Source: Lepidodermella squamata (taxonomy: Eukaryota > Animalia > Gastrotricha). Taken from it: a stretch of DNA of 64,000 nt. Position 1 is the first letter of the stretch. The number at the start of each line of letters is the position of its first letter. The stretch is taken from the NCBI GenBank assembly GCA_047495785.1, contig JBLDXI010000074.1, forward strand, positions 1 to 64,000, given 5' to 3'. A model generated the notes under the pieces. The model was not told the origin of the DNA. It saw nothing but the letters and a program-made list of their open reading frames with translations, and searched no databases. This document shows positions 38,876 through 58,400 of this stretch, piece after piece. The position numbers and the translations under genes were made by a program.

Positions 38876-41800
38876 CTACCGAAGTCGATTGGAAAGTTGG
38901 TGGAATAGACAGAACTGTAATAAAATACATGTCACAAATCTAGGCGCTAACAAAACACTGCCAGTGTTCTTCCTGCCCCACTGGCCTTTCGGACGCGGGG
39001 TCGGCTGCAAATCAATCACTCGCTCTTGTAAGGAATTGCCGTTATTCGAGCCGAATTTCCCGTCAGCTTTAACATCAGGCGACGGCACCGCTGTATCCGG
39101 CACATCGACGTCTTTGTCAATATTGGCCAATAAATTGCCTGTTGATGAAGATTCAGTCATGTCATTGCCCTGGTAGTAGTAGACCTCGGGCGTTTCGATT
39201 GGCAGGGTGTTTGCAAGGGAGGGAGGTATCATTGGAAACGGGCTAGAAACAGTTGGCGCAACGAGGGGCGGAGGTAAAACAGCGTCATTTTCAGCATCTT
39301 CTTGCTGAGCTTCAGATATTATCTCCGGATCTGATAGCACATTAGTTTCTTCGATTGCCGGCGCTGGTGCAGTTGTAGTCGTCTGTGTAGTTGATGTCGA
39401 TGCAGTTGTAGTAGCCATTTTTGCGAAGTTTTCGTCGTACATGAAAATTAGGTCACGGCATTTTATGAGAGGTTCCAAGAATGAAGTAGGCCGGATGAGT
39501 TCGAAAAGTGACAAGTCGACGCCGATTTTAAGCTCGGCTGATGTCGATTCTCGATAGCCGTTGCCAGCAATACCATAGGAATTCGTGGATCTAGAAAAGT
39601 TGACAAATTATTTTAGAAAATTAATATAGAACGATGAGACCAATGGTGTCTTGATTTTTCGAAATTTTAAGTTAAGATAGGTATGGAAAATTGGTATAAC
39701 TTGAACTTGGTTCCAAGGTATAGAAACTTGGCGAAATTACACTTGGAGAAACTATAACTAGTATCGATTTCATGTATCAGTTTTGTAAATCAGTGATTTT
39801 CTTATTGATATGCGAAGTAGAAGCCCTAACTTTAGGGTTCCAGCTCTAATTGGAGGCTCCGGAAATGGATTTTCTTTTCCAAAAAATGGTTTCTCGAGTT
39901 TCCTTATTGTTTCCTTAATATTGCCACGCCTAGCCGAGAGATTCGTCAGTATGGGAATTATCTTAAAAGCCGATATCGATTCCAAGTATCGATTTTAGAA
40001 ATTTGTGATTTTTCAGTAATCAGGCATCTTGGTGGCCAATACTGAAAAGGTTACTACTGAGCTGATCGAGCCTAGTTGCCCAACTACGAAATTTGTCTAA
40101 CGGGATCTTCACGAATAAGGAAATAAAAAATCCCATTAGTATCCGTGTAGTATCCTAGTAAAAAAAAATCAAAAGCAAAAAATTAGAAAATGTGTTGCTA
40201 GGGCCCTTTAAATTAATGCCGGAACTTGTAAAAACTTCCTAAATGTTTGCTTATTTTTTCGAATTTTTTTTGAAAGCTTAGCTTACAGTTTAGATAAATG
40301 ATTTAATTATTATCAAGCTTCCCATTTTTTTATCAATAGTTTGTAGATTTTAGTAAATTTATACATTTTCGGCGGAAAGATTTCAGAAGAATGAATTCAA
40401 ATTGTGATGATTTCTATGCAAAAATACTGTCACATTTCACTTACATTGCAGACGGGGCCATAAGTGAAGGTGAAAGCGGCCTCTTGCTCTGCGCGTCGCC
40501 CACGTACAAAAAAGTCGCTCGATTAATCGCATCAATCGACGTCTCTAGCCTAATAAGCTGCAGCTCCTCAGTTGGCACCCGAATGCCAATCGCCAGACAC
40601 CCACCAGTCGGCGACACATCCTGCCACTCATGCAACCGCCACCGACTCGCCCTGCCACAATTTCCACCATGACTATACTCACTCAGGGTGGTCACAGCCT
40701 GGAAATTCCGAGGCCTAATACGGGCCCAATTCGTGTTGAACAAATAAGCAGCGCCGAACGGGGTCGTTGTATTCCGGCTGTTTCGATAAACCTTCGACTC
40801 AGCACTCGGGAAGGCGTTGTAGATACCCCGAACCAGCCGAAAATCTCCCCCGATTTCAACGTCATAAGTCGGAATACTACACAACGGGTCTTCGTAGTAC
40901 TGGAACAAACCTCGGAACAACGCGGCAGAAACTTCGCTGAAAATGATTTGCCGCATCAAAAACACGCCATAGGGCCGGGTTTCGCATCTTGTAGACACCC
41001 AGCGTTCGCTATTTTTGATGGTTTCATCGTACATTCTAACACTAGGCACGGGCTTGGGTCGTAGATTCGGCATTAGAAAGCTCGCATCAGGCGCCGAAAT
41101 TCTCAGGTTATTCAGGCGAGTTTCCAGTGACATTGCGCTGACGAAAAATTTCGAATAACAATTTTCTTCAATGTCATTCTGGCCCAAGGCGGCGCAGAGT
41201 GGGCACAAATGGGCGATGAAACTCTGCGATTTGTACTGGATTAGCAGATTAGCGGCGTACATTGACGGCTTGTAGTTGAGTTCGCCGAAAATTCCTCGGA
41301 AAATTTGGCCCGTTTTCAACACGGCAATTTCGCTCCAGTTTCGATCGCCGTTATTTTCGTCGATATTTTCGTGGAAAACGCGCCGTTTGTCGACGCGCAG
41401 TAGCAGCAGTTCGTCGATGTTGAAGCCGGCTTTTTTCAGGCAGTCGAGCCGGTCAATGTTTTTGCTGCGTTCCGCTTCGTCGACGATGCGCTGCACGGGC
41501 CGGCTGTTGACGGGCTCTGGCGGCCAGCGGAACATGTCCGGCGTCTGGTCGATTTCGTTGTACATTTCGAACACGACCAAATTGCTGTCTGTTATACTAG
41601 CGTTTTTCGCTAGAATTGGTAATTGTTGGGCGAGATGTGGCCACAACCTAGGAAAAGAAATTCGAATTTTAAATCAAAATTATGAAAAAATTAAAAATTA
41701 ATATTAAAATTGTTCTAATTAAAATAAAATTTAATAACAAAAATGGAAATTTTACAGGTGCAAACAGGGTCAAAAGTTGGTCACGCGATCTCGCCCGATG

Positions 41801-43114
41801 TCACACTTGAGTGATTTTATATCGAAAACGGCTGGGAAGCCGCTTTCGAAGGAAAAGCTTGTCATCACGGTGAGATCTATTATCCCTCGGTGAACAAAAT
41901 TCAGAATGAGTTTCTAAATTGTTGGGAATTTCATAATTAATTAAAAAATAATTAGTATAAATAGTCGTAAAATTCCTTTTATATGCCTTTTAGACACCCT
42001 GAGGTTGTGGTCACCCTAAAAATTATTCAACTGAGAATGAGATGTGGAAGAAAAAATAGAAAGAATAAATAATTTAAAAAATGTTTTTTAGAATTAATTT
42101 ATAAAATTTGGAAAATAATTTTATAGTTATTATTACCTGCCCATGTTGCATGACGGCCTAAATCTGGCCGCTTTTCGTTCCCGCCGCGTCTCCTCATCCT
42201 CACCGGCGTCTTCATCCTCGACCGTCACACCCTGATCATCCCCGCTCGCCATTGTCGTAGTCGGTTGATCGAACAACACGGCCTGGGTTAGGGTTTCCTC
42301 GCCATCGACCGACGACGGGGTGACATGAAGCGGCTGTTGGATGGAAAAGACGCTGTAGTTACTCGCTAGAAATGCCGACGCGTTGAAAACGGTTATCGAA
42401 ACGCGGAAGACGTTTATCTCGGCCTCTTCACCGCCAGGGGTCGACGAGAAAAATTGACGTGAGGGTGATTGGACCACAGTAATCTCACCCTGAAAATCGC
42501 AAAAAAATCAGAAAAATTTGTGAAAAAACTTCACTTCTAAAATATGTTGAGGATTTTTTTTATTTTAAAATTTTATTTAGAAATTAATAAATTATTATCC
42601 GCTGAATTACCTCAGCATTAAATGCGAAAATCGGTATTTTACAACCCGGATCGGCGAATTTGAAGTGTATAGACCGGAAAAACAGCCGCGATGATATCTG
42701 GTTCCACTCACTGCCGTAACTCGGGTTAGGCGGGATCGGATTTTCGTTGTCCTGTGAGGTCGTGTAAAACACATAGCGCCGGTACGTGAACTCAGGCCCA
42801 GGCGCTATTTCGCACCGCATCGACGTCCAAATGCCGTTTAGAGACGCGACAAATTTAGCTGAATCTGTGCCCGAAGCGGGTGAGGGCAGGGAGTTTGAGG
42901 CTAGAAGGGGTGAGTTGATAGCTGTGGCGCATTGCTTAGCGCTCTGGTCGTCTTTATCGGTTATTAGCGGGGCGGTAACCGGGGAGCCGGCCGGCGGAAC
43001 CCCGTCTCCCGAATCATCTGCGAGTGGGTTAAACTGGTATGTCCTAGTTTTTGCCTCTTCGATTAGGAAATCAGCGATTAATGCCAAAATGACTACAAAT
43101 CGTGGCGATATCAT
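38876..43114 (-). CDS. APCDD1: APCDD1-like protein (two APCDD1 repeats); exons 43114-42611, 42489-42137, 41647-40445, 39590-38876
   Basis: LNGIWTSMRCEIAPGPEFTYRRYVFY, WVSTRCETRPYGVFLMR, YYEDPLCSIPTY, WQDVSPTGGCLAIGIRVPTEELQL, RPTSFLEPLIKC; signal peptide and hydrophobic C-terminus; frame-consistent junctions. Confidence 0.88.
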
Positions 43115-45159
43115 AATACTTCCTAGATAATAATAAAAATTAGGTTAATTAAATTTTCTAGGTTAAACTAATAAAGAGAAAAGGATCCTCATTGCAGGAA
43201 AATGGGTCGATAATTTTTTCTGTTGACCCAAATCAATAACCAATTTTCCACACCCACTCGTACAAATTGTGAATGAATAATCGATAAAATGAAGGAGTGT
43301 CCCGTTTAAGATAAAAGTTGTTGGCTATGTATAGACTTGTTTTCCCTAACCTAAAGTGCGGTATCAGAAAAAGATGGTTTGATGAGTAAAAATATGAAAA
43401 AATGTCCGATTTTTCTGGAACGGGAGTTTGAAATTGCCCGTACGATGGAAGGATGAAAACGGGCTGTAGTTATCTTAAAAATCTTGAAAAAATCATAAAA
43501 TATATAAATTTTTATTGAAGCTCATCAGCAGCAAAAATCAACCCAAAAATCCGAAATTTGTACTTGAATATGCGTAGCAATTAGCATTTTCTAATCACTA
43601 TAATTGTATGGGAATCCGTAATGCGAAATTCGAAAATACTGCATATTTTTAGGAACTCGTAAATTACAATAATAGTTATTGTTTGTTTATCGTAAAAACA
43701 AAAATCTGATGGTAAAAGCAGAGATATAAAATAAGTGCAGTTAAATTGGCCAAAACAAATATTTATTTTTAAGTGAAAAGATATTTCGAAAAAATTTGCA
43801 AAATATTTAACGATTATCAAGGACAATGGGGGCGCGTTAGCGGCGCGGCGAGTGTTAAAAAAGATTTCGCCGGCTATTTTTATTCGGCCGCGCCTGTTTT
43901 GTTTTTCGATAATATATCAGCAGAGACCAAGGCGACGATGAAGAAACGCCAGTTGATGGCAATAATAATAATAATAATACAGTGACGAAGATGATGACGA
44001 TGATGAGTTGTTATTTTTCTACTGTCATTATTTGACCATTACCAAATTTTCAGCGATAAAAAGGCGCGCAATTCGATCTCTCACGAGACGCACAACTTGT
44101 TGCGCATGTTATATATTGCGGCTATGATTCGCGCACTAAGATTGGGTTATATACGCCTTAGATGACGGCAAAAAAAGCTGGGAGATTTACGACCCCAACA
44201 GTTCGGTCCCAGTGGCCTGGCTAGAGACAATTATTGCTTATATATTTGAAACATAGAAATAAAAAATCAACAAAGCACGCAATTTTTTGCACCCATATAT
44301 AAAATTGCGGTCGTCGAAATTTATGCTAATAGAGGTGCACTGTATAATAAAAATTCGCGCGCGTTTAGACCTCATTATTGCGGATGTTGCGTAACACCCC
44401 ACGCGCGCGACTTTTGACAAGGAAATTGCGCAACGGTGAGAAGATAAAAACGCGCTTCTGATTAGCGCGCCTTTCTCTCTGTGAACTGCAGCCGTGTTAT
44501 TTATTTGTTGTTCGGTCGACGGCTGAGTGGCAACTCGCGCCGGCTTATCGGGCGCCTACTTTACGCGCGTAAGGTCGTAGGCAGTTCTTGATGGCAGTTC
44601 CGTGTTATATTCGCGCGCTTAAATAAACGATGATGATTGAGGAGCGATAACGATGAACAGCGCGCGTAAATTTGACATTTAGCCATTGCGATTAACGCAA
44701 GCGATGGAACCCAATATCCCCCTAGTTGGCGAAAACTAATTGCTCGCAAAAAATACTGAATTCGCTTGGTTGTAAGTTGATCGAAATACGCTGATTGGAA
44801 AGGAGAGTTTTGTCAACATCAGAGTTTTGATCGGGAATTGCGTGATTGAACAAAGTATTAGGGATCAATGAACGACCGAAAAAAGCTCATGGGACACGCT
44901 TCGATGGATGGACGAGGAAAGCTAAAGAGAGGCACCTGCGAAACCTTCGAAATATTCTTGTGAATTTCCTCTGCGAGAGATGGAAATTCAACCTTTCTAT
45001 CAAAGCCAATCTACTTCAATATTTCGTTGATTTTTGATACGATATTTGCCGATTGCTTGACGAAGATAACCGAATTGTTTGGCCATCAAGCGGTTTACCG
45101 AGGTGAAATTTACGAAAAAATTAAAATTTCTAATTTCTAACCAGGCTTCCATTGGAAAA

Positions 45160-45990
45160 GCTATTTGCAAAATCGATATTAGAAATCGATGCGTGGGGCA
45201 TAGATTGCATTATCTCTAGCAGAATACGCAAAAAGAGCGAGAGATCTTCAGTTGATCCTCTACAATTGAAAATTGGAGGACTCAAACGGGCCGGAATATT
45301 GTATAGTCAAAACCGCATTTCGAAGAATGGTTTTGATACTGATCAGGAAAGCCATCAGAAATTATTGCCGGAGAAAAAACAAATGATAACTGTCAAAAAT
45401 CAAGCGATATTTTATTGCCGTATTCTCCGAAAGCAAACACTAAGCCGAAATGAGAGCACACCACACATTTATGCGAAAATCAGCTCATAGAGGCACTTTT
45501 TCCTGAATTCATAGTGATTTTTGGTGATGGTTTCTGTTTGATTACGTATTATTGCTGCTGTTGTTAGATCAGAAGAAGTCGACTCCTGGCCGCCGACCAT
45601 GGCCGAGTCGGCGTAGCTGGGCGAGGCAGCCGAAGAGCAAATAGTCGCCGGAGAAGGTCGAGTACTCGCCGGCGATCGAACTGCCGCGGTACAGCAAAAC
45701 GTAGACTTCATCGCCGCGCCGCAACTGCCCAACGTAATTGGCTACCTGTGCGTGTTTTTTATTTACAAAAGAATTAATTATAAAATAATCGAAAATCTCG
45801 CATCGGTCAATTGATAATGACATTCATTCTGTTGGCTGAAAACTATTTTTTTCAGCCAAAAATAAACGATAAAACACGAAGGATGAAAACGTGGAAACAA
45901 TTATTTTATATATAATTCAAATTTTTTTAATACTCTACTTATACCGATCCTCCGTCGAGGCGTACTGGGTTACATCATGATAGGATGGCC
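45160..45990 (-). pseudogene. Partial tandem duplicate of the C1q gene 3' end (end of exon 2, intron, last exon, 3' flank)
   Basis: Matches ~49400-50200 in the same orientation; last exon 45569-45744 VANYVGQLRRGDEVYVLL...VDFF; preceding donor and exon remnant degraded. Confidence 0.85.
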
Positions 45991-46229
45991 TCCACACAGC
46001 CCGCTATTTTTTTATACCTGTTCAGGCTTCCTTTATACCTCATTTCATTAGAGTGAATGTAATCTGTTTGATGTTGGTGAACACCGTTGCAGCATGTGAA
46101 ATTAAGCGTTTTAGACTTCAATAATTCTCATATCATTTTATTCGAATCCGTTGCGCCAAGTGAAAACATGATTTTTTATAGTTACAGATTGTTATTAAAA
46201 ACGGATGAATGGAACGAGACGGTTATAGC

Positions 46230-47695
46230 TCATTTAGTGGCCTCTTCGATCATTCCACGAATTCGACTGCAAATTCCACGAAGCATGGATTGGTTATGTG
46301 ACGTGCGTTCTCCAAAGATATTAAGGAATAGATCGTAAGGTTCTGAAACAAAATAGACGCCATCCATACGAAGCTTCAGGAAATACCAGCGCATAGTGTC
46401 GGTCACAATTCCGAAGGAAAATTTGTTGCCAAACTGAGAGCCTAGATGCTCAACGGTCAATCTTTTCTAAAATAGAGACTACTGATATGATATGGATGAA
46501 TCGGAGGAATTGCGCTAGTCATACCTTTGATAGACAATCCATTGCAACTAGGGCTTGAGGTATTCCAGATTCCGGGTTGTCCTGGCTCGAAGCAATAACT
46601 GCTATTTCAACATCCCCGCAGAAGATAACGATGTCTGCATCACCATTAAGCTTGCTGTACTCGTCATTGATGCCCACTTCGCGATCCAATACAAATTTAG
46701 GATCAAGTCCTTCTATTTTTTAATCAATATTACGAACACTGTTAAAGAGAACGCCAACACTTACGCAACGCAAAGAGGAAAAACGGCATGCTGAGAAACG
46801 ACCTTTTGGCTTCACGATCAATAGTGGAAAAAGGCATTCGCTTCGAAAAGAGCTACAATTTAGTAAAAATTACATTAGCTCTCATTAAAGTACAGTAACG
46901 AACATCAAGCATTTTATGAAAATCATCAAAATCGGTATCCGAAATTGGCGATTCAATGGGGCGGAAGGTTTCATATCTGAGACATAAAAATGCATTTTAC
47001 AAGCATTTCAAATTCGAAATCACTCACGATTTTATGTAGAACCGATCGAGTAAATTCATCCTGTCACAGAGAGAACGAAAGCAGGTGTCGATGCCCTTTC
47101 TTTCCAGTGCTTCAGCAATAGCCTTCAGTCGTTTGCTGATCGCATCATACTTAGGAATGGCTTCAGGTTTAAGTCGCGCTAAAATTTATTTGAAAAAGTG
47201 ACATAGAATACCTATTCACGCTTTGATTCTTACCTCTGACTTTATCCCCAACTGAAAAATGCAAAGAGATAACGCAAATTAATTAAATGACATAGATATG
47301 AAACTACCTTGAAGTTCCAATTCGTGAATTCTGGGCTTGTACTCTGCTAGGACTATTTCGATAGAACTTTTAGAAAGCGCAACAGATTGCTTCAAATTAT
47401 GCACAAGCCCAACGATGACATCCAACTGTTCTTGCAAATAGTTTCTGTCATCGCTGTCGGTTGTTGTCTCCAGCTCTTCACGCAGTGATGCAATTTCTAT
47501 CCGCCTTTCGGCAAGTTCTTCCCTCAGTTTAGCGCCCTTCGCGAGCAGTGGCTTCAGTTCGGCGTCTAACTGGTCTTTCAGCGCGTCGATATCTTTTAGA
47601 CTTGGTGATGGTTTGCTGGGAGGAGATTCATTGCTTGTTCCTGCGGTAGCTGTGCCATCTTCAGCTGATCGCATCCGTTTAGAGTTGTTCATCAT
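46230..47695 (-). CDS. 380-aa coiled-coil plus PD-(D/E)xK restriction-endonuclease-like (CR-REase/Crinkler-type) protein; exons 47695-47308, 47251-47234, 47178-47028, 46976-46904, 46852-46765, 46712-46525, 46466-46230
   Basis: Seven exons joined by 50-58-nt GT-AG introns give an open 1143-nt frame; C-terminal half REAKRSFLSMPFF...LDREVGI...LNGDADIVIF...IAVIASSQDNPESGIPQALVAM...FSFGIVTDTMRWYFLKL...VSEPY. Confidence 0.75.
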
Positions 47696-48443
47696 GCGAT
47701 CAAAGCTAGCTATAACAAGAGCTATATTCAAATTAATGTATCAAGATATAAATATTTAAAAACGATCCGGAATTTGGTATCCTAAAATTAGAGCATTTGA
47801 TGCTTCTAATTGTACAATGCAAATCGCATGATTTCTAATGTTGAGTTGTTTTTTCATTCAGAACGCGCACGTTTTTCGCGTATTTTCTCATTCATAAAAC
47901 AGCAACGCATTTTTACGCACAGCAATAATTTTATTTCTATTGCACACACAAAACGATGTTAATAACCGAGTACAGAAGGCGAGTGAAGCGAGCCTGGATG
48001 AGACGTTGAAACGAATCGAAGCAAAAGTGGAACGAGTGCGGAGACGAGTTTCAACGTTTCCCACTTTGTAGGCCACTTATCGCAGCCTATGCTTTTTATT
48101 GAACGTAGTATCCCCAAGCAAGTGACTCATTCTTCGTGCGGCGAGTGCTAAGTTATTGCCCTCAATAAAGCACTCACACACACACATAAACACGCACCTT
48201 CGGTGTTAGCAATAATGCGAGCGTTGCAAAACTAGCGCGAATTTCAGTAAATTGACTTCGCTCTCTACGGTGGTCATAATTTCGCTGAGCGGGGCATGTT
48301 CAGCGAGGTACTATAGCTGATGCTCACTTTCAGCACAAAATTTGATTCAAATGAGGTGAAAAAACCCGCATAACTTTTCAGAAGTCCATGAAAATTGGAA
48401 GCTGTTAGATCACTCGTTTTGATCCTAATCTCGAAAACGCTCC

Positions 48444-48536
48444 CTCGAGTAAACGGGGACGAGTGAAAAACGAGCAAGCGGAACGAGGCGCAGCCGAGTG
48501 GAGCGCTAGTTTGTTCACGAGTCGAAGTTTACGAGC
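48444..48536. repeat. Imperfect palindrome centred on cgaggcgcagccgag, probably TE-derived
   Basis: ctcgagtaaac...gtgaaaaacgagcaagcg vs cgctagtttgttcacgag...gtttacgag. Confidence 0.4.
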
Positions 48537-49756
48537 GGATACTTAACGGCGGATTTTTTTCGCATTTTTATTAGATGAAGAATTGAAACCCTAAATGTAT
48601 TGAAGAGCTTTATAGGTGTCATGGAGAGGAGAAATACGGCGTTTCGGAAAGTTGTCTAGAGTACCAGAATTTTTTCGTACCGGTCTAAAATTTATCGTAG
48701 TGATTACTACCAAGTAAAGTCAATGTAAACGTAATGGAAACACACCTGTTTCACAGAGTTTCGTTTCAAATCCATGCAAATTTTAAAAATTTTGCACACC
48801 TGTTCACCATATTGCGCAAATGCCGCAACAGGTGGGAATGCCTCTTCTTGCACGCAAGTCTTATTCTCATTAACAAGACGACGCTCAAAATCAGCCTTAA
48901 TGATGTGCAGATGACGGACTCGATAAAATTACAGCTGTTTTAGAATGCTTGTTTTGTCTAGAGTCTGATGATGGTATGAGCTAGTACCGAAACATCACTA
49001 TCAAATCAAAATGTCAGCAGAACATTGCTATGTTTCTTGTTAAAATTATTAGAAACAAATATCATTTCTCGAAATTGTGTTTAGCTTGAATCTTTGGATT
49101 TCATTTTCTTTGGCTCCAGTAATTTTTATCACAATTTCTCTTGCTGCGGTTGCCAATAATTTAGCTGTGATTTCGCGCAAAAGGTGAAATACAAATTCAC
49201 GACAAAAATTGCCATGTGAAGAAAAATATGAATATCGAAAAATGAATTAAGGCCCAATATTATATTTACGGCGAAAATTCTGCAATTTGTGACCGCAGCT
49301 TTATGTGTCAATGTATCTGATTCTCTGGCCAGTTGACCGGTTACTTCCAAGAAAGCCTAGTCATTTCGGATAGCGGCTATGATGATTTACCATAGATCAT
49401 ACTTATATTTGCAAAATCGATATTTGAAATTGATGCATGTTTTGTTATATCTGGGGAGGGAACCTATTGCCCTATTGAATATGTTAACGAAATAATACGA
49501 AAGATCTTCCTTTGATCCTCGATAATTGATATACAATCTGAAGAAAACATGAGGTATTGATAGCTGACAAAAATCAAGCGGTATTTTATTGCCGTAATTT
49601 TCGCCTCACATCTCTCCGAAAGCAAACACAAAGCCGAAATGAGAGCACACCACACATTTATGCGCAAATCAGCTCATAGAGGCACTTTTTCCTGAATTCA
49701 CAGTGATTTTTGGCGGTTTCTGTTTGATTATGTATTTTATTGCTGCTGTTGTTAGA

Positions 49757-51172
49757 TCAGAAGAAGTCGACCGGCGTCAGTGGATTCGTCGACTCCTGGC
49801 CGCCGAACATGGCCGAGTCGGCGTAGCTGGGCGAGGCAGCCGGCGGGTCGGCGAAGAGCAAATAGCCGGAGAAGGTCGAGTACTCGCCGGCGATCGAACT
49901 GCCGCGGTACAGCAAAACGTAGACTTCATCGCCGCGCCGCAACTGCGCAACGTAATTGGCTACCTGTGCGTGTTTTTTATTTACAAAAGAATTAATTATA
50001 AAATAATCGAAAATCTCGCATCGGTCAATTGAAAATGGCATGTGACTAAAAGCTATCTTTATCAGTCAACAATTGATGGTGAAAGATGAAGAATGAAAAC
50101 GTGGAAAAATTATTTCTATGAGTTTCCATTAAATAGTCTACTTACCGATCCGCCGTCTTGAGTCGAGGCGTAAAGGGCTACAGCATGATAGGATCCATGC
50201 ATGATGAAAGCAGTGATTCCGGCGCCGGCAGTTTGCGCGCGAAGGGTGACAAAAAATGCGTAGATGCCCCCAATGGGTGCCACGAATTTATACGAGTATT
50301 CATTGTATCCTTTGCCAGCATTGAGGCGGACGTCCTTGAAAGCCGTGGCGTTGTGCTGGGACAAGGGTCCTTGCGGCTCTGGGGCCATGGCGAAGAAGGC
50401 GATGCGGTCACGTGAAACGGCGGCTGTTGGAGGTCCAAAGCCTTGTGGTGCGGGTGGTCCCGGCTCACCCTTCTCACCCTTCGTTCCGTCTTCACCTTTC
50501 GGACCGCTAAAACGAGGATAAAGTAAAGACTGAGTAATATTTCAATCAAGTTGAAATTTTTAAAATTTTATTCGACTCGCAATCAAGAGGATCTTTGATT
50601 GGGTGATTAGGGTGACATGTGACATGGGTGATCTATAAGGTTACAAAAAGCTAATGATTTCCGGACTTGTGATGCCTTTAGTCACCCTATCACCCAATAG
50701 GTGACTAAAGGAATCCCAAATGTACGATTCTTTGGTGCCTTTTTTTCATGAAATTTCTGGTTCTCTGCTTCCCCCATCACCCCAGCGTCACCCAGCTGAT
50801 CCGGGGTGCCATTGTGGAACTGATGTTTGGTTATTTCCTCTTTTGAAATATCACCCATCAAATTGTTCACTAAAATACTTACCGCCGGCCCGGTCGTCCA
50901 ATCTCCCCTAGCTCGCCCTTTTCACCCTTCGTACCCATCTGGCCGGGTATGCCAGGAATACCAGCCGTCGCTATGCAACAACACTGATTGCCGCCATTTT
51001 GGCAGCACTCTCGCTTGTCGCCAGTCGCGTAGACGCTACTCTGGCCGCCTGGTCCAACAGGACTCAACGGAATGTTGTTATCCTGAGCAAGAAACGACTT
51101 GATCTGAAACTCCTCGCCGTAAACTAGCAGAAACGAAGCGGCAAAAACGGTTAATTTAAACGCCGCTGCCAT
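49757..51172 (-). CDS. Secreted collagen-C1q (C1qTNF/C1QL-like) protein; exons 51172-50883, 50506-50146, 49963-49757
   Basis: Signal MAAAFKLTVFAASFLLVYG; CC...CCC cluster; Gly-X-Y repeats; gC1q RIAFFA...FKDVRLNAGKGY...FVAPIGGIYAF...QLRRGDEVYV...STFSGYLLF. Confidence 0.9.
50598..50860. repeat. GGGTGA/TCACCC motif-rich foldback element in C1q intron 1
   Basis: gggtga repeated on the left and tcaccc repeated on the right. Confidence 0.4.
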
Positions 51173-52456
51173 TTCCCGAAAATTTCGAACCGAAAAATGT
51201 GTGTATTCTACTGGCGTTGTATTGTTATTAGGTTCGTCAAAACAAGTTGTGATGGCGACAACAACGCGCTCTGGAACCAATAAATAACAACAAGTTATCG
51301 AATTACGCCGAGACAGTAGAAGTAGTCGTGCTCATCCTCGGGGCGGTTCTTCGCATCAAATTACGCGGGTCAGTAAATTTGCGGCAAATCATCTTTCATC
51401 CGCGCATTAGTCGTCCGCCTTAATGCATTGCGACATTGGCGTTATCAAGGCGGCGGCACCTTGGTCGATACATACACTATACCCTCAAATCGAGCGTGAA
51501 TTTTATGTTTGAAACACCCTGCTTGAGGCGACTTTCTAGCAGCTTCTATGATTTTCCACTTTTATTTATACAACTCCCGTTATTCATTCATTCACTTGTC
51601 TTCTCTCAATTATTTGATTATCGCGACATACACTGCTGACGATTTTCATGTACACAACGACAGGTGAGACGATAGGTGTGGTCAGAAATCAATAGCAAAA
51701 TTTGGTCAGAAGAACAAGAAGAAGAAGAAGACACAATAATCATCAACAACAACAACAATAACAGTAAAATTTGCGCAAGGAAGCGTCGCTCATCAATCAT
51801 CCACTCGCCCATCATTATTATATATACGTAAAAATTATTTTTCTCACTTTTTTCTGTAGAAAAAGATGCGCGTGTGAAATAAAGCGATATAGAATATTAT
51901 TATAATATAATTAAACAATAAAATTTTTACAATTTTTTTCAACATTGATTGTGCCGTAGTAATCATTTCCAGCGGTAAAAAAGAGTGGTCCTTAGGTCAG
52001 TATTTTTTCCCCGCAATTTTTTTTCATGTAATACACATCGAGAAAGCTCATGTTTAAATTAGTGTTTTGTGTTCAGAAGCGCTGTTTTGGCATGCGGCGG
52101 CGAAAAAAATTAGTGAAAAATTAAACCCAGCCATCGACATAGAATTTCCAAGGTCAATTTTTTGCATGTCAACATAAATTATATTTATAGGCGAAATTGG
52201 CGGAAAAAACGTGGCTGCGATCATCAAAATAACGGAGTACGTAAAAAACGCGGAGACGGTGGACAAAAATTGGCGAAAAAACACTATAGCCATCACAGAT
52301 AGCGGGATAAAATTAAACGACAACAACTTGAAAAATCGACACTTTTCTATCCTATGCAATGTTGAAATTTGTAATTATTCACTCGAAAGAAATTGTTCCA
52401 TGCCCTCTTCCGGGTTCATTTTTCGATTTTTTTACGGGTACTTTTTGATTGATCAA

Positions 52457-55400
52457 CTACGCTGTTGTCGTAAATTTGCGAAGAGCTTCCTTTTCCTCGT
52501 CGGTCAGCTCGCGGTTCAACGTACGTCTCGCCGATTTTCTCTCCCGTAACCGCGTCCTAAATCGGTCTCGAGACGGTGATTTGTGATTGGCGACTGCCGT
52601 GCTGATGCACGCTTCCAGCATCGCGTCTTCCATGTTCGTTGTGCTGCTCACGGTTGAAACCGGGCTCATATCTGAGCCGCCGTTCTGACCGTAACCGTTA
52701 CCATTGATTGAATTTGTCGAATCGCAAACGGACATGTAAGCAGGTGAGAAACCATTGTGCGAAACACGACGGCCTCGTTCTAAAATTATTAGAAAATGAC
52801 AATAAAAATAATAGAAAAACCAATTTCGAATAATTAATAGTGAACAATTAGGAAGATATCAGGGGTATAGATCAGAGAGTTATTATTGTATCTAGAATAA
52901 TTGTATGAAAATTTAAATTTACGCACTTTTCTTTCAGTTTTCTTCCTAGATAACCTTTTTCAGAACATTAAATACCTTAACGAGGAGTAACTTTGCTCAA
53001 AACCATTCATTTTGAAGGTGGAAAATCTAGAAATTTAGCCAAGGCGATTCCCGATTTTTTTGCTAATTTTGGGGATTTTTTATCTTTCACTGATAATTTG
53101 CAAACCAAGGAACATTTCTGTCAATTTGGCTTTGTGTGTTTCAAGATTCGCGGTTAAAATTTGGATTGGGTAGAATTTTGAATAAGTTTAATTCAGGAAA
53201 ATTCAAGTGCATATTCAATCCAAAAACTGATTTTAGTCACACTACTTGTAAATTTTTCTGAAAATGTATTTTCGCTCCAATCACCTCGAGTTTCATTTCA
53301 ATTTATTAATTTCAAACCAATTTATTTCAAGTTCCATCCTCAAAACTCGAGCACTTGCATAGCCCAAGATGTCACCGCGCGTTACAGGAGGAGAAAAAGG
53401 TTATTTGAAAGGATATTTTCATGCACATTCTGTTCCTTAGGTATTCAACTATCCTATATTAAGGAGGATTTAATTCTATTCTAACATTTCTGTCTATAAG
53501 TATCTACGCATCTCATTTTACCTCGCACGAAATAAAAGTAACACCGCAATGGGTCAATCAACGCTATTATTATCCAAGGTAAATAACACAAGTATTTTTT
53601 CCTCCGGTCAATATAACAAATATATGTATAATATAAAAGCGCAGTCGGAAATTGACCACACACCTATATAGCCTATATAGCTTACCGTCTTCGGTGAAAC
53701 TCGACAGCGACGCCCGGCCGTTGTACTGAGAGCCGTTGCTATTCAAGTGACCATTGCCATTCTGCATCGTCGGCTGCACTGAGAATCGCCGACTCGCACT
53801 CGGGTGGCGAGATGCGGCGGGGTAGTACAGGCTGTCCATCGACTGGTCCGTCGATAGGCTCGGGTGCTTCGTAAACCCTGTTGAGGTGTTGTGAATGGCC
53901 GATGAATCCTCAATTGGACCACCGTTAGGTTGCTGCTCACCATATTGATCAATCTATTGATAAAAAATTCGAGTATAATGAAAATTCGACGAAAAATGTT
54001 TAAAATTCGATTGGAATATTTCTCAGAATTTATGGAAAAATAAATTTGAAACATTTCTTCAGCAAACCAGAATTTAACGGTTTCGAAACAAAATCAATCA
54101 AACCCGGGCACCGAATTCAAATTATGCAAATTTTGATGAATTTCATGAAAAATTTATAGAAATTAAAAATTAATTTATTCTAAGCAGAATTTAATCAACA
54201 TTCTCTCATTTTCGTTCTTTCCCAAAAATTTAGAAGTTATTCTTTAAATTAACAATTCGAGATTCGGTTTTGAATTTCCAAAATTTTCAAAACATGGTCA
54301 AATTTGTTCACATTTGAGAAAAAATTTCAGCACTGTAAAACTTTGTCTTTCATTTTTTCAGTCATTTTCAGGTCATTTCAGTCCAATATTTATGTTTACC
54401 AAACTTACAATCATTTTTCCGCGCGTTTTCCTCCTCTCTCGGTTCCTGTCTTTTTTCTCGCGTTGTTGTAGCACTTTTTCGCGCGTCGTGCGGTATTCGA
54501 GCGCAAACTCGGACACGACCTTGCAAATATTGTTAATTTTCACCTGAGGACACAAAAAAGCGCATTCTTAGTTCATCTTTCAATTTCTTCAGATTTTTCT
54601 GTATCCATACCGCTCTTGCCGCGGCTGGTGAATAGCCGAAAAATGCCAGCAGCTTGTTGAAGCGGTTTGTGACTCGATTGTACACAACGTTGAGTATCAC
54701 AATTCTCTCGTGAGCGTCGTTCAAGAACTCGGACAGCCTGATAACAAACGGCGGCGTGAGATGGCAAGATTATTTTTACTTCAAGGTGGATAATAAGTCC
54801 ACTTACCTTTGTTTCAACTGCGACGCCGCCGGCTCATGCTTTGTGACGAGTTTCAAATTCTCATCGCTCATTTGACAGTCACGTTCCAAGCTGAAATACA
54901 TACAAACAATAATAATAATAATAATAAAACGGTAATATTCGTTAACGCGAAAAGCCAATTTAACGACACAATAAAAGTATAATTATAAATACTCGTCATA
55001 AAATTAGAAGTATGAGAAAATTGCATGCTCGAGAATACCGAAAAATAAAATTAGATTATACATAATCAAAATATTTGAAGAGCCCAAATGGCCGAAATAA
55101 TGACGACCATGGAAATTCAAAATACAAAATTTAATAATTTCTTTCAAAACCTCAAATTTTAGCAAATTTATCAAATTTTTTCAAATTAAAATTAAAAAAT
55201 TAAAAAAATTTGAAAAAAATTCGAGTTTTTTTATATTTTTTTATTCGATTAAATTTACCGTTCAAGTTTATCAGCCAGTTCTTCCCACTCGACTTTGGCG
55301 CATCGCGTCGTAGCACCAATTTCCGAATACAGATCGGTACTATCCGGAAATTGGTCGATAACAAGGTTCGCAACGTGGTACAGCAACGAGTGTTTATAAA

Positions 55401-58400
55401 CCGTGTCCTTCACCTCAGGCACGCGACTCAAATACTCGATATTGAACCCCTGAGCGTGAACTCCATTCAAACAATTTCCAACCGCGAGAAGGGTCGACAT
55501 GATGTATCGAAGTGTCGAGTTATTTTGCAGCTCAACGCAGCATTGCTTCAAATCCATTAGCGGTTCGACGATTTCACGCTCCAGTGAGTCGAAATCGAGC
55601 CGGAACGCCCATAGCTGTAAACGAGCGTTGATTTCCGGTATTTGTGACAGCATATAGAGAAATTGCTCGGCAGTGGCTAGCGGCACGCCTGGATTTGCTT
55701 GAATCGCGTCCTGAATTTTCACCTTCTCTTCTTCAGTCGGCAGCATTGTTGACATAATTTTCTAAAATATCAGCATATTTAACAAAAAATCGATAAAATT
55801 CAGGAAATTCAAACCTCAATTGCCTCGCGATTCATGACGGTCGTGTCCATTTTGAGGACGGCTTGTTTAATCACTCGAGGGGCGGGTAAGATGGTCATTC
55901 CGATATTAACAGCATTTGACCGTTTTGCATCGAGGACGCTGATTTCCCTAGGTCGAGCCATATTCGAATCAGCATTGCTTTTCTGAAATAATTAAAACGA
56001 AAATGATAAAATAATGCAAAAATTAAAAATTTCTCAAGAATGCAGGTGAATATTTTTGTCATCAGCAAACAAAGTCAATTTTTCAAAGATTTTTCACGAA
56101 AATCAAAATGAACCCCAAAACAACATCATTTTTCGCGAATTTTTCAATTTTTCACTCGGCCCTGGTTATTAAACATGCGTTCAAACTGGGTTAATTCAAA
56201 ATTTTGCATTCAAAACACCCGCATTCTCGAAAATAAAATATTAAAAAATCAACTCACGAAATCCTGTATGAGACAAGCGCGATTGAATCATCATCAAAGA
56301 CATCGAAATTGCGACAGTGTCGAGCAGCCATGATTCAAATGAAACGAAAAAAATGCACAAACAAGACAAGTTATTTTATAGCGAAAAACACGGCAAACTG
56401 ACTAGAAATTATAACTACTCAGAAAATACTAGTCTACTAAAATTGAAGACCATGCTTACAAAGAAATGAAATTCTCGAATTTTTATACATTTAATTCCAT
56501 GCGAAAAACTTGAAATTAAAATAACCGACCTTTTGCTTCAGCTCAGTAGCTTTTGTTTCGAACAGATATTCGAACTGATCTGCGTTGATTTGAACGTTAG
56601 GCAGTCGTTGCCAGAACGACGAGACGCCAACTGGTTGTAGGACCTCATCTTCCGCCCTAACTTCCCGCCAATGCAATCGGACAGTTTTGCGCTGTTTCTG
56701 GGTCGGAACCGGGGGTGGGGGAGGAGGAGGCCCGCCGCCGTTCGACATGCCGTTCGGCAGCGGTGGCGGCGGTGGGATGTTGCCAGGCATCATCGGAGGC
56801 GGTGGCGGTGGAGGCGCCGGCGGGATGCTAGACCCGTTCGGCCTCACTTTCATGATGACTGAAAACACATTCACGTCATCCTTCTCCGTCAAATCGTCGA
56901 AATCGAGGTCTTTCAGCCGCAACGGCCGGCGCAGCGTTTTCGCGAGTTCTGCGAAATTCTTGCGTAGCCGACCCACCCCGGCGGGTATTTCGAGTTCCGG
57001 TGCCTGGGCAGCGGCCTGTTGAGCCGCCATTGCTTGTACAGCCTGTTGGACGGCTAGACTGGCTGCTGATACGGCGGACTGGCCGTTTGATGGTCGCAGC
57101 AAGGCCGAGCCTTCGACAATGTCGGACGGTAGAAAACCTCGTCCGTTTTGATTTGGAGGAAGGTTCGATTGCGGAGGCATTGGCGGGGGAGGGGGTGGAG
57201 GAGGTGGAGGTGGTACAGGTATTGAAATATTGTTCTGAGCTGAAATTACACAAAATCCAATTAAAATTTCCGCAAACAAAATTGGAGACAAATAAGAAAA
57301 AAAATTATTTTCGGAATTTTCAATTTCCATTCAAGACGAAATTGAAAGAATTGAGTTAAAATTGATCATAAAATGAAAGGAAAGTGAGCACAATTTTGAA
57401 TAATTTTAAAGCGACATCCGAGCAAACGAAAAAGGAGCAAACTTGAATGGATCTCGAGGTTGGACCTCAACAATGTCCCCATTGAAATATCTGGAAAAAA
57501 TGTCCGTTCACGTTTGCTCAGTTTTCGTTAGATCAAATCTAGGCACACAGATCAATTACAAGATTATTGAATTTTCTTTTCAGTATTTTTTTAAATTAAA
57601 ATGTAATTTTTACACACCACCGTGCATCATGCTGTTAGAAAATTCCACAACAAACTGCATCCAAAGGTCTTCATCGGTCTGAATCGACGCCTGTTTGACA
57701 ATTTTCTCACTCGCCTCGCCGATGCCACTCGAATTAGACGGCGAGCGTGTGTTGTGCTGATCGTCACCCAGCTTCAAAATCGGCCCACAAGGCGGTACGG
57801 ATAGAGTAAGAAAATTTGAATTATCACCCGCGGTTAACACCGCGCAATTAACGTCAACCTCCGAAATCATTTGCAACATTTTTAGATCTTCAATAGTCAT
57901 CGTCTGCTCAGCAATTCCACACTCGACAGCTGCAGCAGTTAATTTCTGATGATTGAGTATATCTTGTTTCGTCACTTCAGTAGAAGGCGACGCCGAGGCA
58001 GGAGATAGCGAATCAGTGGTCAGCGTGGCTGATTTTACGGAAAGATCCGGCTCGATAACACAGGACATTGGAATGTTTACGGGCGAGGTTAGGGAATTCG
58101 TGCACGAACTACTAATTGCAGTACTAGTAATTGTTGTTGTTGTTGTTATTGCCGCTGGCGAAGTAGAGGAAGTCATCGACACCGATCGGCCGACGACGGT
58201 GAAAGCTGTAATTTGAAACAAACACACGGCAAAATAGAATCATGCAAGGTTATTGATGCAATAAAAATAATATAAAATGCCAAAAAACAAGGTTATTTTG
58301 ATTTGAGATCGAAAGGTAGACGGAATTTGGAAAATATTTTTAGAATTAAATCATTAATTTTTCCATCCAAAAATGAAATATCGGCAAAATATTGCTAATT

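What the first reader, a model, noticed from the sequence alone, without database searches (positions are those of the whole stretch)
46230..47695. Intact spliced Crinkler/CR-REase-type gene in an animal genome, with a degenerate nuclease active site
Seen: the ORF track shows only two fragments, but seven exons (one an 18-nt microexon, 47251-47234) join through canonical ~50-58-nt introns into a clean 380-aa frame. It has a coiled-coil N-terminus and the ordered motifs E-helix, E...G-x-x-D-hhh, hhh-[ExK], G-x-x-Q, FGIVTD-x-x-x-W-x-F. Known: that order matches PD-(D/E)xK REase domains related to the HsdR N-terminus and found in Crinkler-RHS effector families, best described in fungi, oomycetes and protists. 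Seen: the ExK position reads IAVI-A-S-S while the preceding Asp (NGDAD) is kept. Inference: a maintained pseudo-nuclease (nucleic-acid binder, decoy or antidote to active paralogues) or a domesticated or horizontally acquired conflict gene that has gained host-type introns.
Basis: partly seen in the sequence, partly recalled or inferred. Interest (0 to 1): 0.8.

Follow-up and report, generated by a model that had tools for sequence, protein, structure and literature searches.

The report
Expressed nuclease-fold gene lacking catalytic motif
A real, spliced and transcribed gene of a small invertebrate joins a helical N-terminal region to a domain resembling a bacterial restriction-enzyme nuclease, but this copy has lost the seven codons for the catalytic E-x-K motif that two of its roughly nine paralogues still keep.

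Summary
Seven minus-strand exons (47695-46230), including the 18-nt microexon, give a clean 380-codon frame. RNA-like contigs of a public run skip all six introns at the predicted bases and end in a poly(A) tail at 46117. The gene belongs to a family of about nine intact paralogues plus fragments in this 121-Mb genome. A full HMMER search of 1.84 billion proteins found one outside relative, on environmental contigs.

Exons 5-7 read as a PD-(D/E)xK domain of the HsdR-N/Cas4 type. The support is only convergent and sub-threshold: profile hits, language-model neighbours and the secondary structure of exon pieces. Structure searches on half-domains gave nothing significant.

The "A-S-S" site is a clean 21-nt in-frame deletion, shared with the 95%-identical copy on contig C13. 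It removes the E-x-K that paralogues C99 and C42 keep; other copies lost it by substitution. C99 is transcribed in the same sample.

Most likely this is a maintained non-catalytic nuclease-fold protein. A Crinkler identity is not supported, gene transfer could not be tested and the EAD9 hit is unproven.

The parts
47308..47695 (-). Exon 1 (codons 1-129). It holds a low-complexity, basic N-terminus and then two long predicted helices around a conserved TTDS turn. This is the family-specific 'header'.
   Evidence: Frame and ATG. RNA-like contigs cover 47308-47679. Conserved columns are in alignment A4. Pfam EAD9 scores 24.5 bits against a cut-off of 25, alongside other coiled-coil-type hits.
47234..47251 (-). 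Exon 2, an 18-nt microexon (reads V-G-D-K-V-R across the phase-1 junctions).
   Evidence: AG/GT flanks. An X1 contig has 18 letters between 47308 and 47178, and the depth bins fit these bases. It is conserved in four paralogues.
47028..47178 (-). Exon 3, helical linker region.
   Evidence: joint 46976/47028; contig piece 47028-47178; paralogue matches.
46904..46976 (-). Exon 4.
   Evidence: joints 46852/46904 and 46976/47028.
46765..46852 (-). Exon 5. It holds the conserved RMP...D-x-E-A-K-R-x-F-L-S-x-P-F-F motif, taken as helix alpha-1 of the nuclease-like domain with its Glu.
   Evidence: Alignment A3; joints. The helix assignment is inferred from the motif pattern and was not folded.
46525..46712 (-). 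Exon 6, with predicted strand-strand-strand-helix. It carries the invariant Asp (GDADIVIF) and the Gln helix (IPQALV). The strand that should carry E-x-K is shortened.
   Evidence: Alignment A2. AF2 fragment model: E5-15, E20-31, E34-38, H46-60, pLDDT 63. Weak PD-(D/E)xK profile hits come from the paralogues' exon 6, and the nearest Atlas clusters are HSDR_N.
46593..46594 (-). Junction of the 21-nt in-frame deletion that removes the E-x-K-containing stretch present in paralogue C99.
   Evidence: Nucleotide alignment of exon 6 of C74, C13, C99, C1 and C42. RNA-like (X1) and DNA (X2) contigs cross the junction without any difference.
46230..46466 (-). Exon 7 with the stop codon. It holds the FGIVTD-x3-W-Y-F strands, a further strand and a long C-terminal helix.
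   Evidence: Alignment A1. AF2 fragment model: E16-22, E26-33, E38-40, H56-77, pLDDT 75. PADLOC PD_DExK E = 5e-3, and 5e-4 for C99.
46117..46229 (-). 3' UTR, with AATAAA at 46142-46137 and the poly(A) site near 46117.
   Evidence: Loose end of T's on the + strand at 46117 in X1; sequence. The UTR is conserved in C99 up to the poly(A) site.
47710..47718 (-). TTGTTATAG, an acceptor-like motif 15 nt upstream of the ATG and conserved in C13 and C99. It could be the acceptor of a 5'-UTR intron or of trans-splicing.
   Evidence: Alignment A5. No read evidence: X1 contigs stop at 47679.

Best explanation
WHAT IT IS. The locus is an expressed seven-exon gene of a lineage-restricted animal family. Each member has a disordered basic N-terminus, a roughly 95-residue two-helix header, a helical linker, and a C-terminal domain of the PD-(D/E)xK (restriction-endonuclease-like) fold. 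Its motif order is that of the HsdR N-terminal type: Glu helix, G-x-x-D strand, E-x-K strand, Gln helix, then G-I-V-T-D-x3-W-x-F strands.

WHAT IS SHOWN. In this copy, and in its 95%-identical twin on contig C13, a 21-nt in-frame deletion has removed the strand segment that carries E-x-K.

WHAT IS INFERRED. The protein should therefore be unable to do canonical metal-dependent phosphodiester cleavage. It most likely acts as a non-catalytic nucleic-acid-binding or regulatory subunit. It may work in a complex with the E-x-K-bearing paralogues C99 or C42, in the way ERCC1, EME1 or RecC partner active relatives.

The family repeatedly produces such dead copies. At least two, and probably three, independent losses occurred, while the rest of the domain was conserved.
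For: - **Gene, splicing and poly(A) site:**
- **Family:** intact loci on C13, C99, C1, C42 and C32 (three copies), a divergent one on C54, and fragments on C2 and C32.
- **Deletion:**
- **E-x-K status:** kept only in C99 (E-E-K) and C42 (E-V-K). C1 reads E-E-I. The C32 copies read D/N-x-M. The clades are (C74/C13, C99), (C1, C42) and (C32a, b, c).
- **Linked losses:** the alpha-1 Glu is also lost in C1 and C32c, as expected if these residues form one site.
- **Fold, profile hits:** every informative sub-threshold hit on exons 6 and 7 falls in one clan. They are PADLOC PD_DExK 5e-4/5e-3 and Cas4c 9e-3, Pfam HSDR_N_2 0.011, and TIGR cas4 0.03 and RecU 8e-3.
- **Fold, language-model neighbours:** HSDR_N at 0.86 for C99 exon 6, and PDDEXK_12 and HSDR_N for exon 7.
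- **Fold, fragment models:** strand-strand-strand-helix twice.
- **Constraint:** dN/dS is about 0.15-0.2 against distant paralogues (with dS saturated) and 0.40 against C13. The window copy has 6 private changes against 11 in C99.
- **Co-expression:** the variant contig in X1 matches C99 base for base and is spliced.
- **Background:** inactive PD-(D/E)xK members serving as structural or binding units are established (PMC3424549).
Against: - No profile hit reaches a curated threshold.
- Profile searches of PDB sequences found nothing.
- Foldseek and VIA-align on the two half-domain models gave no significant match.
- The whole domain was never folded.
- E-x-K is present in only 2 of about 10 members and absent in the C54/environmental outgroup. 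It may be a late gain or a coincidence.
- dN/dS against C99 is 0.72, which fits relaxed constraint as well as diversifying selection, and dS varies along the gene (0.45 to 0.15), so gene conversion may distort it.
- Nothing shows nucleic-acid binding or binding to a paralogue.
- The homodimer test of the header gave no verdict.
Confidence: 0.55

Rival explanations
1. It is an expressed but functionless copy on its way to becoming a pseudogene. Loss of the catalytic stretch ended its function, and the intact frame only reflects the short time since then.
For: dN/dS is 0.72 against C99. Against C13 it is 0.40, but that rests on only 17 changes. The family does leave dead relics on C2 and at C32:663456.
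Against: The deletion predates the split of C74 and C13 (about 4-5% DNA divergence). Even so, all seven exons, six splice-site pairs, the microexon and the 3' UTR are intact in both copies. It has fewer private changes than C99, 6 against 11. It is transcribed and correctly spliced. Other E-x-K-less copies (C1 and the C32 trio) are also intact across saturated dS.
Confidence: 0.15
2. The domain is not a nuclease relative at all. The family would be a novel alpha/beta domain behind a coiled coil, and the D...E-x-K...Q pattern in two members would be chance.
For: No hit passes a curated cut-off. Structural searches on fragments are blank. The motif is absent in most members and in the outgroup.
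Against: Five of the seven family hits with E below 0.05 on exons 6 and 7 are PD-(D/E)xK families. They come from four libraries, two different exons and paralogues only 30-50% identical. Language-model neighbours of both exons are HSDR_N-type. The order of secondary-structure elements and the motif spacing fit that type.
Confidence: 0.13
3. It is still an active nuclease that uses other residues, for example the invariant Glu at the start of strand 3, in place of the lost E-x-K.
For: D26, E35 and Q52 of exon 6 are invariant in the main clade, even in copies without E-x-K. Migration of active-site residues is known in this superfamily (PMC3424549).
Against: In the fragment model the invariant Glu lies next to the hairpin turn, far from the Asp at the other end of the hairpin. 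No Lys or Arg replaces the lost Lys nearby in this copy.
Confidence: 0.08
4. It is a Crinkler/CR-type effector, or an EAD9-linked effector recruited by a STAND/NTPase sensor, as in bacterial conflict systems.
For: The architecture is a non-catalytic header plus a C-terminal REase-like domain. The family is expanded in one lineage and evolves fast. EAD9 scores 24.5 bits here and 25.4 in C13, and the family gives the top EAD9 hits in the genome.
Against: There is no Crinkler Ubl header and no signal peptide-like start. The header is found with no other C-terminal domain. No other gene carries a convincing EAD9: the only outside hit is an enkurin-like gene, so the model also rings on ordinary charged helices. 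EAD9 also rings below its cut-off in 3 of 14 control genomes.
Confidence: 0.05

Closest known systems
HsdR N-terminal-type PD-(D/E)xK domains (Pfam HSDR_N PF04313, HSDR_N_2 PF13588)
   Same: The motif order and spacing match: Glu helix, x-D-h-h-h strand, h-h-h-E-x-K strand (in paralogues), Gln helix, then G-h-h-T-x-x-x-W-x-F strands. One paralogue gives a weak HSDR_N_2 hit. The nearest named Atlas clusters for both exons are of this type.
   Different: This is a eukaryotic, seven-exon gene with no helicase or motor module, and it sits behind a helical header. All scores are below threshold. This copy lacks E-x-K. In 2012 the group was listed as prokaryotic only (PMC3424549).
CR-REase domains of Crinkler-RHS-type effectors (Zhang et al. 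2016, as summarised in PMC5289972)
   Same: Both are eukaryotic proteins with a non-enzymatic N-terminal header and a C-terminal REase-superfamily domain. Both show lineage-specific expansion. Alpha-helical headers are described for some CR proteins.
   Different: There is no Ubl/LxLFLAK header and no NTPase, HTH or kinase companion. The header is not shared with other C-terminal domains. PDDEXK_12 gave no match. I could not read the primary paper, which is not held.
Cas4/RecB-like and RecU nucleases
   Same: Exon 6 of C99, C42 and the environmental relative gives weak hits to Cas4c, TIGR00372 cas4 and RecU over the D...E-x-K region.
   Different: The E-values are only 0.008-0.03, and there is no Fe-S cysteine cluster. 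These hits indicate the superfamily, not family membership.
Non-catalytic PD-(D/E)xK paralogues that partner active ones (ERCC1 with XPF, EME1 with MUS81, RecC with RecB)
   Same: A copy without catalytic residues is kept intact beside a sister paralogue that has them, and both are transcribed in one sample.
   Different: There is no evidence of physical association here, no sequence relationship to those families, and the family is restricted to one lineage.

Membership tests
PD-(D/E)xK (restriction-endonuclease-like) superfamily, HsdR-N type | A significant profile match to a member family | tested here: not met
   The best hits are PD_DExK 5e-4 (C99 exon 7), RecU 8e-3, Cas4c 9e-3, HSDR_N_2 0.011 and cas4 0.03. 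All are far below curated cut-offs. Profile searches of PDB sequences were blank. The searches had to be run exon by exon, which halves the signal.
PD-(D/E)xK (restriction-endonuclease-like) superfamily, HsdR-N type | Core order of elements: alpha, beta-beta-beta, alpha, beta | tested here: met
   The exon 6 model gives strand-strand-strand-helix and the exon 7 model gives strand-strand-strand-helix. The alpha-1 helix in exon 5 is inferred only. These are fragment models with pLDDT 63 and 75.
PD-(D/E)xK (restriction-endonuclease-like) superfamily, HsdR-N type | Three-dimensional similarity to solved members | tested here: inconclusive
   Foldseek found no match at E <= 0.001, and VIA-align gave best Z of 4.4 and 3.9 on the half-domains. 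Several PD-(D/E)xK chains (Cas4, SduA, BsaXI, AddAB, Bax1, AF1548) appear among the non-significant exon 6 rows. The whole domain was not folded.
PD-(D/E)xK (restriction-endonuclease-like) superfamily, HsdR-N type | Catalytic D...(D/E)-x-K | tested here: not met
   The Asp is present, but the E-x-K stretch is deleted in the window copy and in C13. It is present in paralogues C99 and C42.
Crinkler / CR effectors | N-terminal Crinkler (Ubl, LxLFLAK-type) header | tested here: not met
   A Pfam scan of exon 1 at E up to 10 lists no Crinkler domain.
Crinkler / CR effectors | One header combined with varied C-terminal toxin domains in the same genome | tested here: not met
   Exon 1 finds only the loci of this family in the 121-Mb genome, apart from weak coiled-coil noise.
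Crinkler / CR effectors | C-terminal domain belongs to a described CR-REase family | tested here: inconclusive
   PF20516 (PDDEXK_12) found nothing in the genome, but it rang in no control genome either. It is only a 0.82 language-model lead.
EAD9-linked effectors of NTP-dependent conflict systems (Kaur et al. 2020, PMC7159879) | EAD9 domain above the Pfam cut-off | tested here: inconclusive
   The score is 24.5 bits against a cut-off of 25 here. In the genome search it is 25.4 bits in C13 and 22.9-23.1 in C74 and C99. An unrelated enkurin-like gene scores 21.8.
EAD9-linked effectors of NTP-dependent conflict systems (Kaur et al. 2020, PMC7159879) | A core or sensor protein carrying the same EAD | tested here: not met
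   No other convincing EAD9 or header match exists in the genome.

The most novel reading that the evidence does not exclude
The family may be an animal-born system of paired nuclease-fold proteins. Catalytically dead copies such as this one would be kept because they bind and restrain, or re-target, their E-x-K-bearing sisters C99 and C42. That would be a self-made toxin/antidote or active/regulator pair, arising repeatedly by duplication and loss of the active site. It could serve in defence against mobile DNA or act as a selfish element.
Probability: 0.12. Interest if true: 0.75.

Novelty: new variant of a known kind. Interest (0 to 1): 0.42.

Why it matters
If the fold assignment holds, this is an undescribed animal family of restriction-enzyme-like proteins with its own N-terminal header. 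It is invisible to ordinary sequence searches: a search of 1.84 billion proteins found one relative. It also offers natural matched pairs of active-looking and dead-looking paralogues, expressed together. That makes it a convenient case for asking how pseudo-enzymes arise and what they are kept for. It is not evidence of a Crinkler effector or of recent gene transfer into an animal.

Tried and rejected
- **Pfam, NCBIfam, PHROGs and PADLOC on single exons:** only sub-threshold hits.
- **Genome-wide scans with PF20516 and PF13588:** nothing found.
- **PDB sequence profiles:** nothing relevant.
- **Full HMMER search with the exon 7 profile:** 8 hits, but only P0001 is real. The other seven are long proteins, mostly repetitive (four examined), with piled-up scores.
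- **JGI metagenome scan:** no relative.
- **Foldseek and VIA-align on half-domain models:** not significant.
- **Complex prediction on a homodimer of header residues 30-129:** no verdict (score 0.00), which is neither for nor against.
- **EAD9 as a real homology:** rejected as unproven, because an enkurin-like gene and control genomes also ring.
- **Terminal repeats around the gene, as a sign of a mobile cassette:** none found.
- **Organism:** the nematode SL1 leader is absent. Rfam found nothing in the window. The organism stays unidentified.
- **Literature:** the Zhang et al. 2016 paper is not held.

Full report

Yes. Reading the minus strand and joining the predicted exons in a local script gives seven exons:
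- 47695-47308
- 47251-47234
- 47178-47028
- 46976-46904
- 46852-46765
- 46712-46525
- 46466-46230

Together they make 1143 nt, 380 codons and a stop. The six GT..AG introns are 51-58 nt long.

One public run (X1, guessed to be RNA) holds contigs that skip introns 3-6 at exactly these bases. One of its contigs has 18 letters between 47308 and 47178, and the depth in the two bins there equals 6 and 12 bases of the microexon. A run of T's at 46117 marks a poly(A) tail, 20 nt downstream of an AATAAA. A second run (X2, DNA-like) keeps the introns. No intron-less copy of the gene turned up in the genome searches, so these joints are splicing.

The microexon is conserved in position and length in paralogues that are saturated at synonymous sites. 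The joined sequence was used only to check the frame. It went to no search or fold tool.

**2. What surrounds it?**

The window is part of contig C74 of a 121-Mb assembly. C74 is collinear with C13:4605478-4624237 at 94-95% identity over at least 14 kb. This is either a second haplotype or a very recent segmental copy.

The neighbours are ordinary animal genes:
- C1q-domain gene pieces on both sides (45572-45823; 49760-51280, with a collagen stalk)
- an APCDD1-like gene (40444-43114)
- a formin (55258-57330)

A repeat with more than 25 genomic copies lies just upstream, at 47787-48539. No terminal repeats flank the gene.

The organism is unidentified. Earlier notes of this scan call it a spiralian, perhaps a rotifer, and I could not confirm this. 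The nematode SL1 leader is absent.

**3. The family**

Exon-by-exon searches of the genome find these loci:
- intact seven-exon relatives on C13, C99, C1, C42 and C32 (three copies)
- a divergent one on C54
- fragments on C2 and at C32:663456
- a spare header exon at C32:726140

Distances over exons 6 and 7 give three clades: (C74/C13, C99), (C1, C42) and (C32a, b, c).

Outside this genome the family is almost invisible. A full HMMER search of 1.84 billion representative proteins with the exon 7 profile found one real relative, P0001. It lies on three environmental contigs beside a GPCR gene. It is the counterpart of the C54 copy, at 40-75% identity per exon. The other seven hits are long proteins, mostly repetitive in the four I examined. 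A scan of JGI metagenome contigs found nothing.

**4. What is the C-terminal domain?**

No single test is significant, but the weak signals agree.

Across four libraries, seven families hit exons 6 or 7 with E below 0.05. Five of them are PD-(D/E)xK families:

| Library and family | Hit on | E-value |
|---|---|---|
| PADLOC PD_DExK | window exon 7 | 5e-3 |
| PADLOC PD_DExK | C99 exon 7 | 5e-4 |
| PADLOC Cas4c | C99 exon 6 | 9e-3 |
| Pfam HSDR_N_2 | one exon 6 | 0.011 |
| TIGR00372 cas4 | C42 exon 6 | 0.03 |
| NCBIfam RecU | exon 6 of the environmental relative | 8e-3 |

The other two are GDH2_N and a PHROG of unknown function.

The exon 6 hits map to the middle of those profiles, and the exon 7 hits map to positions 97-127 of 146. 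That is the collinear order expected of one split domain.

Language-model neighbours point the same way. For C99 exon 6 they are HSDR_N clusters (0.86, 0.86, 0.84), XisH and HSDR_N_2. For the window's exon 7 the named ones are PDDEXK_12 and HSDR_N.

AlphaFold2 on the two exon pieces gives strand-strand-strand-helix for each. With the conserved helix motif of exon 5, that is the alpha-beta-beta-beta-alpha-beta order of the superfamily (PMC3424549).

Foldseek and VIA-align on these half-domains were not significant. Profile searches of PDB sequences were blank. I put the fold assignment at about 85%. The decisive test is a fold of the whole domain, and it was left out because the joined model has no reference.

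**5. The active site**

The protein and nucleotide alignments of exon 6 show that C74 and C13 lack exactly 21 nt between 46594 and 46593. Contigs of both runs cross the junction unchanged, so it is not an assembly error.

| Copy | Reading at the E-x-K position |
|---|---|
| C99 | E-E-K |
| C42 | E-V-K |
| C1 | E-E-I |
| C32 copies | D/N-x-M |
| C54 and its environmental relative | no motif |

With an intact member in each of two clades, the simplest history is at least two, and probably three, independent losses.

C1 and C32c have also lost the alpha-1 Glu, as expected if these residues form one site. The upstream Asp, a Glu at the start of strand 3 and the Gln of the next helix are invariant in the main clade.

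In a beta-2/beta-3 hairpin the Asp faces the far end of strand 3, which is exactly the part this copy has lost.

**6. Is the dead copy maintained?**

The deletion is older than the C74/C13 split, yet both copies keep every exon, splice site and the 3' UTR.

| Comparison | dN/dS | Note |
|---|---|---|
| vs C13 | 0.40 | 17 changes only |
| vs C99 | 0.72 | |
| vs other clades | 0.15-0.2 | dS saturated |

Relative to the outgroups, the window copy has 6 private changes in exons 6-7 against 11 for C99. It is therefore not the faster-evolving sister.

dS falls from 0.45 in exon 1 to 0.15 in exons 6-7. Similarity to the C99 locus starts about 40 nt before the ATG and stops at the poly(A) site. Gene conversion between the two loci is therefore possible and would distort these ratios.

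C99 itself is transcribed and spliced in the same run. The variant contig differs from the window at exactly the seven exonic positions where C99 differs.

**7. The N-terminal header**

Exon 1 has conserved ESPP, EL-x-PLL, TTDS and Y-x-P-x-I-x-E-L motifs around two long helices.

Pfam EAD9 scores 24.5 bits against a cut-off of 25, and the family gives the best EAD9 hits in the genome. However, an enkurin-like gene scores almost as well, and three control genomes ring below the cut-off. I treat this as unproven.

No Crinkler domain is found. The header occurs with no other C-terminal domain. A homodimer prediction gave no verdict.

**8. Most likely mechanism**

- **Shown:** an expressed protein with a helical header and a nuclease-like domain that lacks the E-x-K strand segment.
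- **Inferred:** it cannot cleave by the canonical mechanism. It is kept as a binding or regulatory subunit, possibly together with the intact sisters. This rests on analogy with ERCC1, EME1 and RecC, from established knowledge and PMC3424549.
- **Rivals:** a decaying copy, a non-nuclease fold, residual activity through other residues, or a Crinkler/EAD-type effector. The last is the least likely.

**9. Comparison and novelty**

The domain works like, and most probably belongs to, the PD-(D/E)xK superfamily near the HsdR-N type. That group was listed as prokaryotic in the 2012 survey.

It fails the membership tests for Crinkler/CR effectors. Horizontal transfer cannot be judged, because no donor-side relative is detectable and the intron structure is shared by all paralogues.

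I rate it a new variant of a known kind, of moderate interest.

I found this gene's header in no other gene.
Noticed in passing
window 47787-48539: A repeat with more than 25 copies across the genome lies directly upstream of the gene. Its end pieces match in inverted orientation at other loci, which suggests a non-autonomous DNA transposon. A second repeat family lies at about 48792-49045.
   Followed up: partly
window 40000-54000 vs G000:C13:4605478-4624237: The two stretches are collinear at 94-95% identity, with an extra segment of about 4.9 kb in C13 (4614434-4619357). C74 is either a diverged second haplotype or a recent segmental duplicate. Both carry the 21-nt deletion.
   Followed up: partly
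window 46114-47736 vs G000:C99:17084-18735: Similarity between the two paralogous loci, introns included, begins about 40 nt before the ATG and ends at the poly(A) site. The 3' UTR is better conserved than synonymous sites, and dS falls from 0.45 (exon 1) to 0.15 (exons 6-7). The pattern suggests gene conversion or a duplication unit equal to the transcription unit.
   Followed up: partly
window 47710-47718: An acceptor-like TTGTTATAG lies 15 nt upstream of the ATG and is conserved in C74, C13 and C99. It could mark a 5'-UTR intron or spliced-leader trans-splicing. No read evidence was available.
   Followed up: no
window 45572-45823 and 49760-51280: C1q-domain gene pieces lie on both sides of the gene, the upstream one with a collagen-repeat exon. 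The nuclease-like gene and the repeats sit between two C1q-type paralogues.
   Followed up: partly
G000:C32:663456-773457: Three intact family members, one exon 7 relic and a spare header exon (C32:726140-726424) lie within about 110 kb. This is a local cluster of E-x-K-less copies.
   Followed up: partly
L026-L028 (ENA metagenome contigs): The only outside relative lies on environmental contigs that also carry a 7TM receptor gene. They presumably come from an unsampled animal related to this one.
   Followed up: partly
G000:C24:299540-299680 (L023): An enkurin-like gene (judged by eye from the ORF) gives a near-threshold EAD9 hit. This shows that the Pfam EAD9 model rings on ordinary charged helices.
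   Followed up: partly
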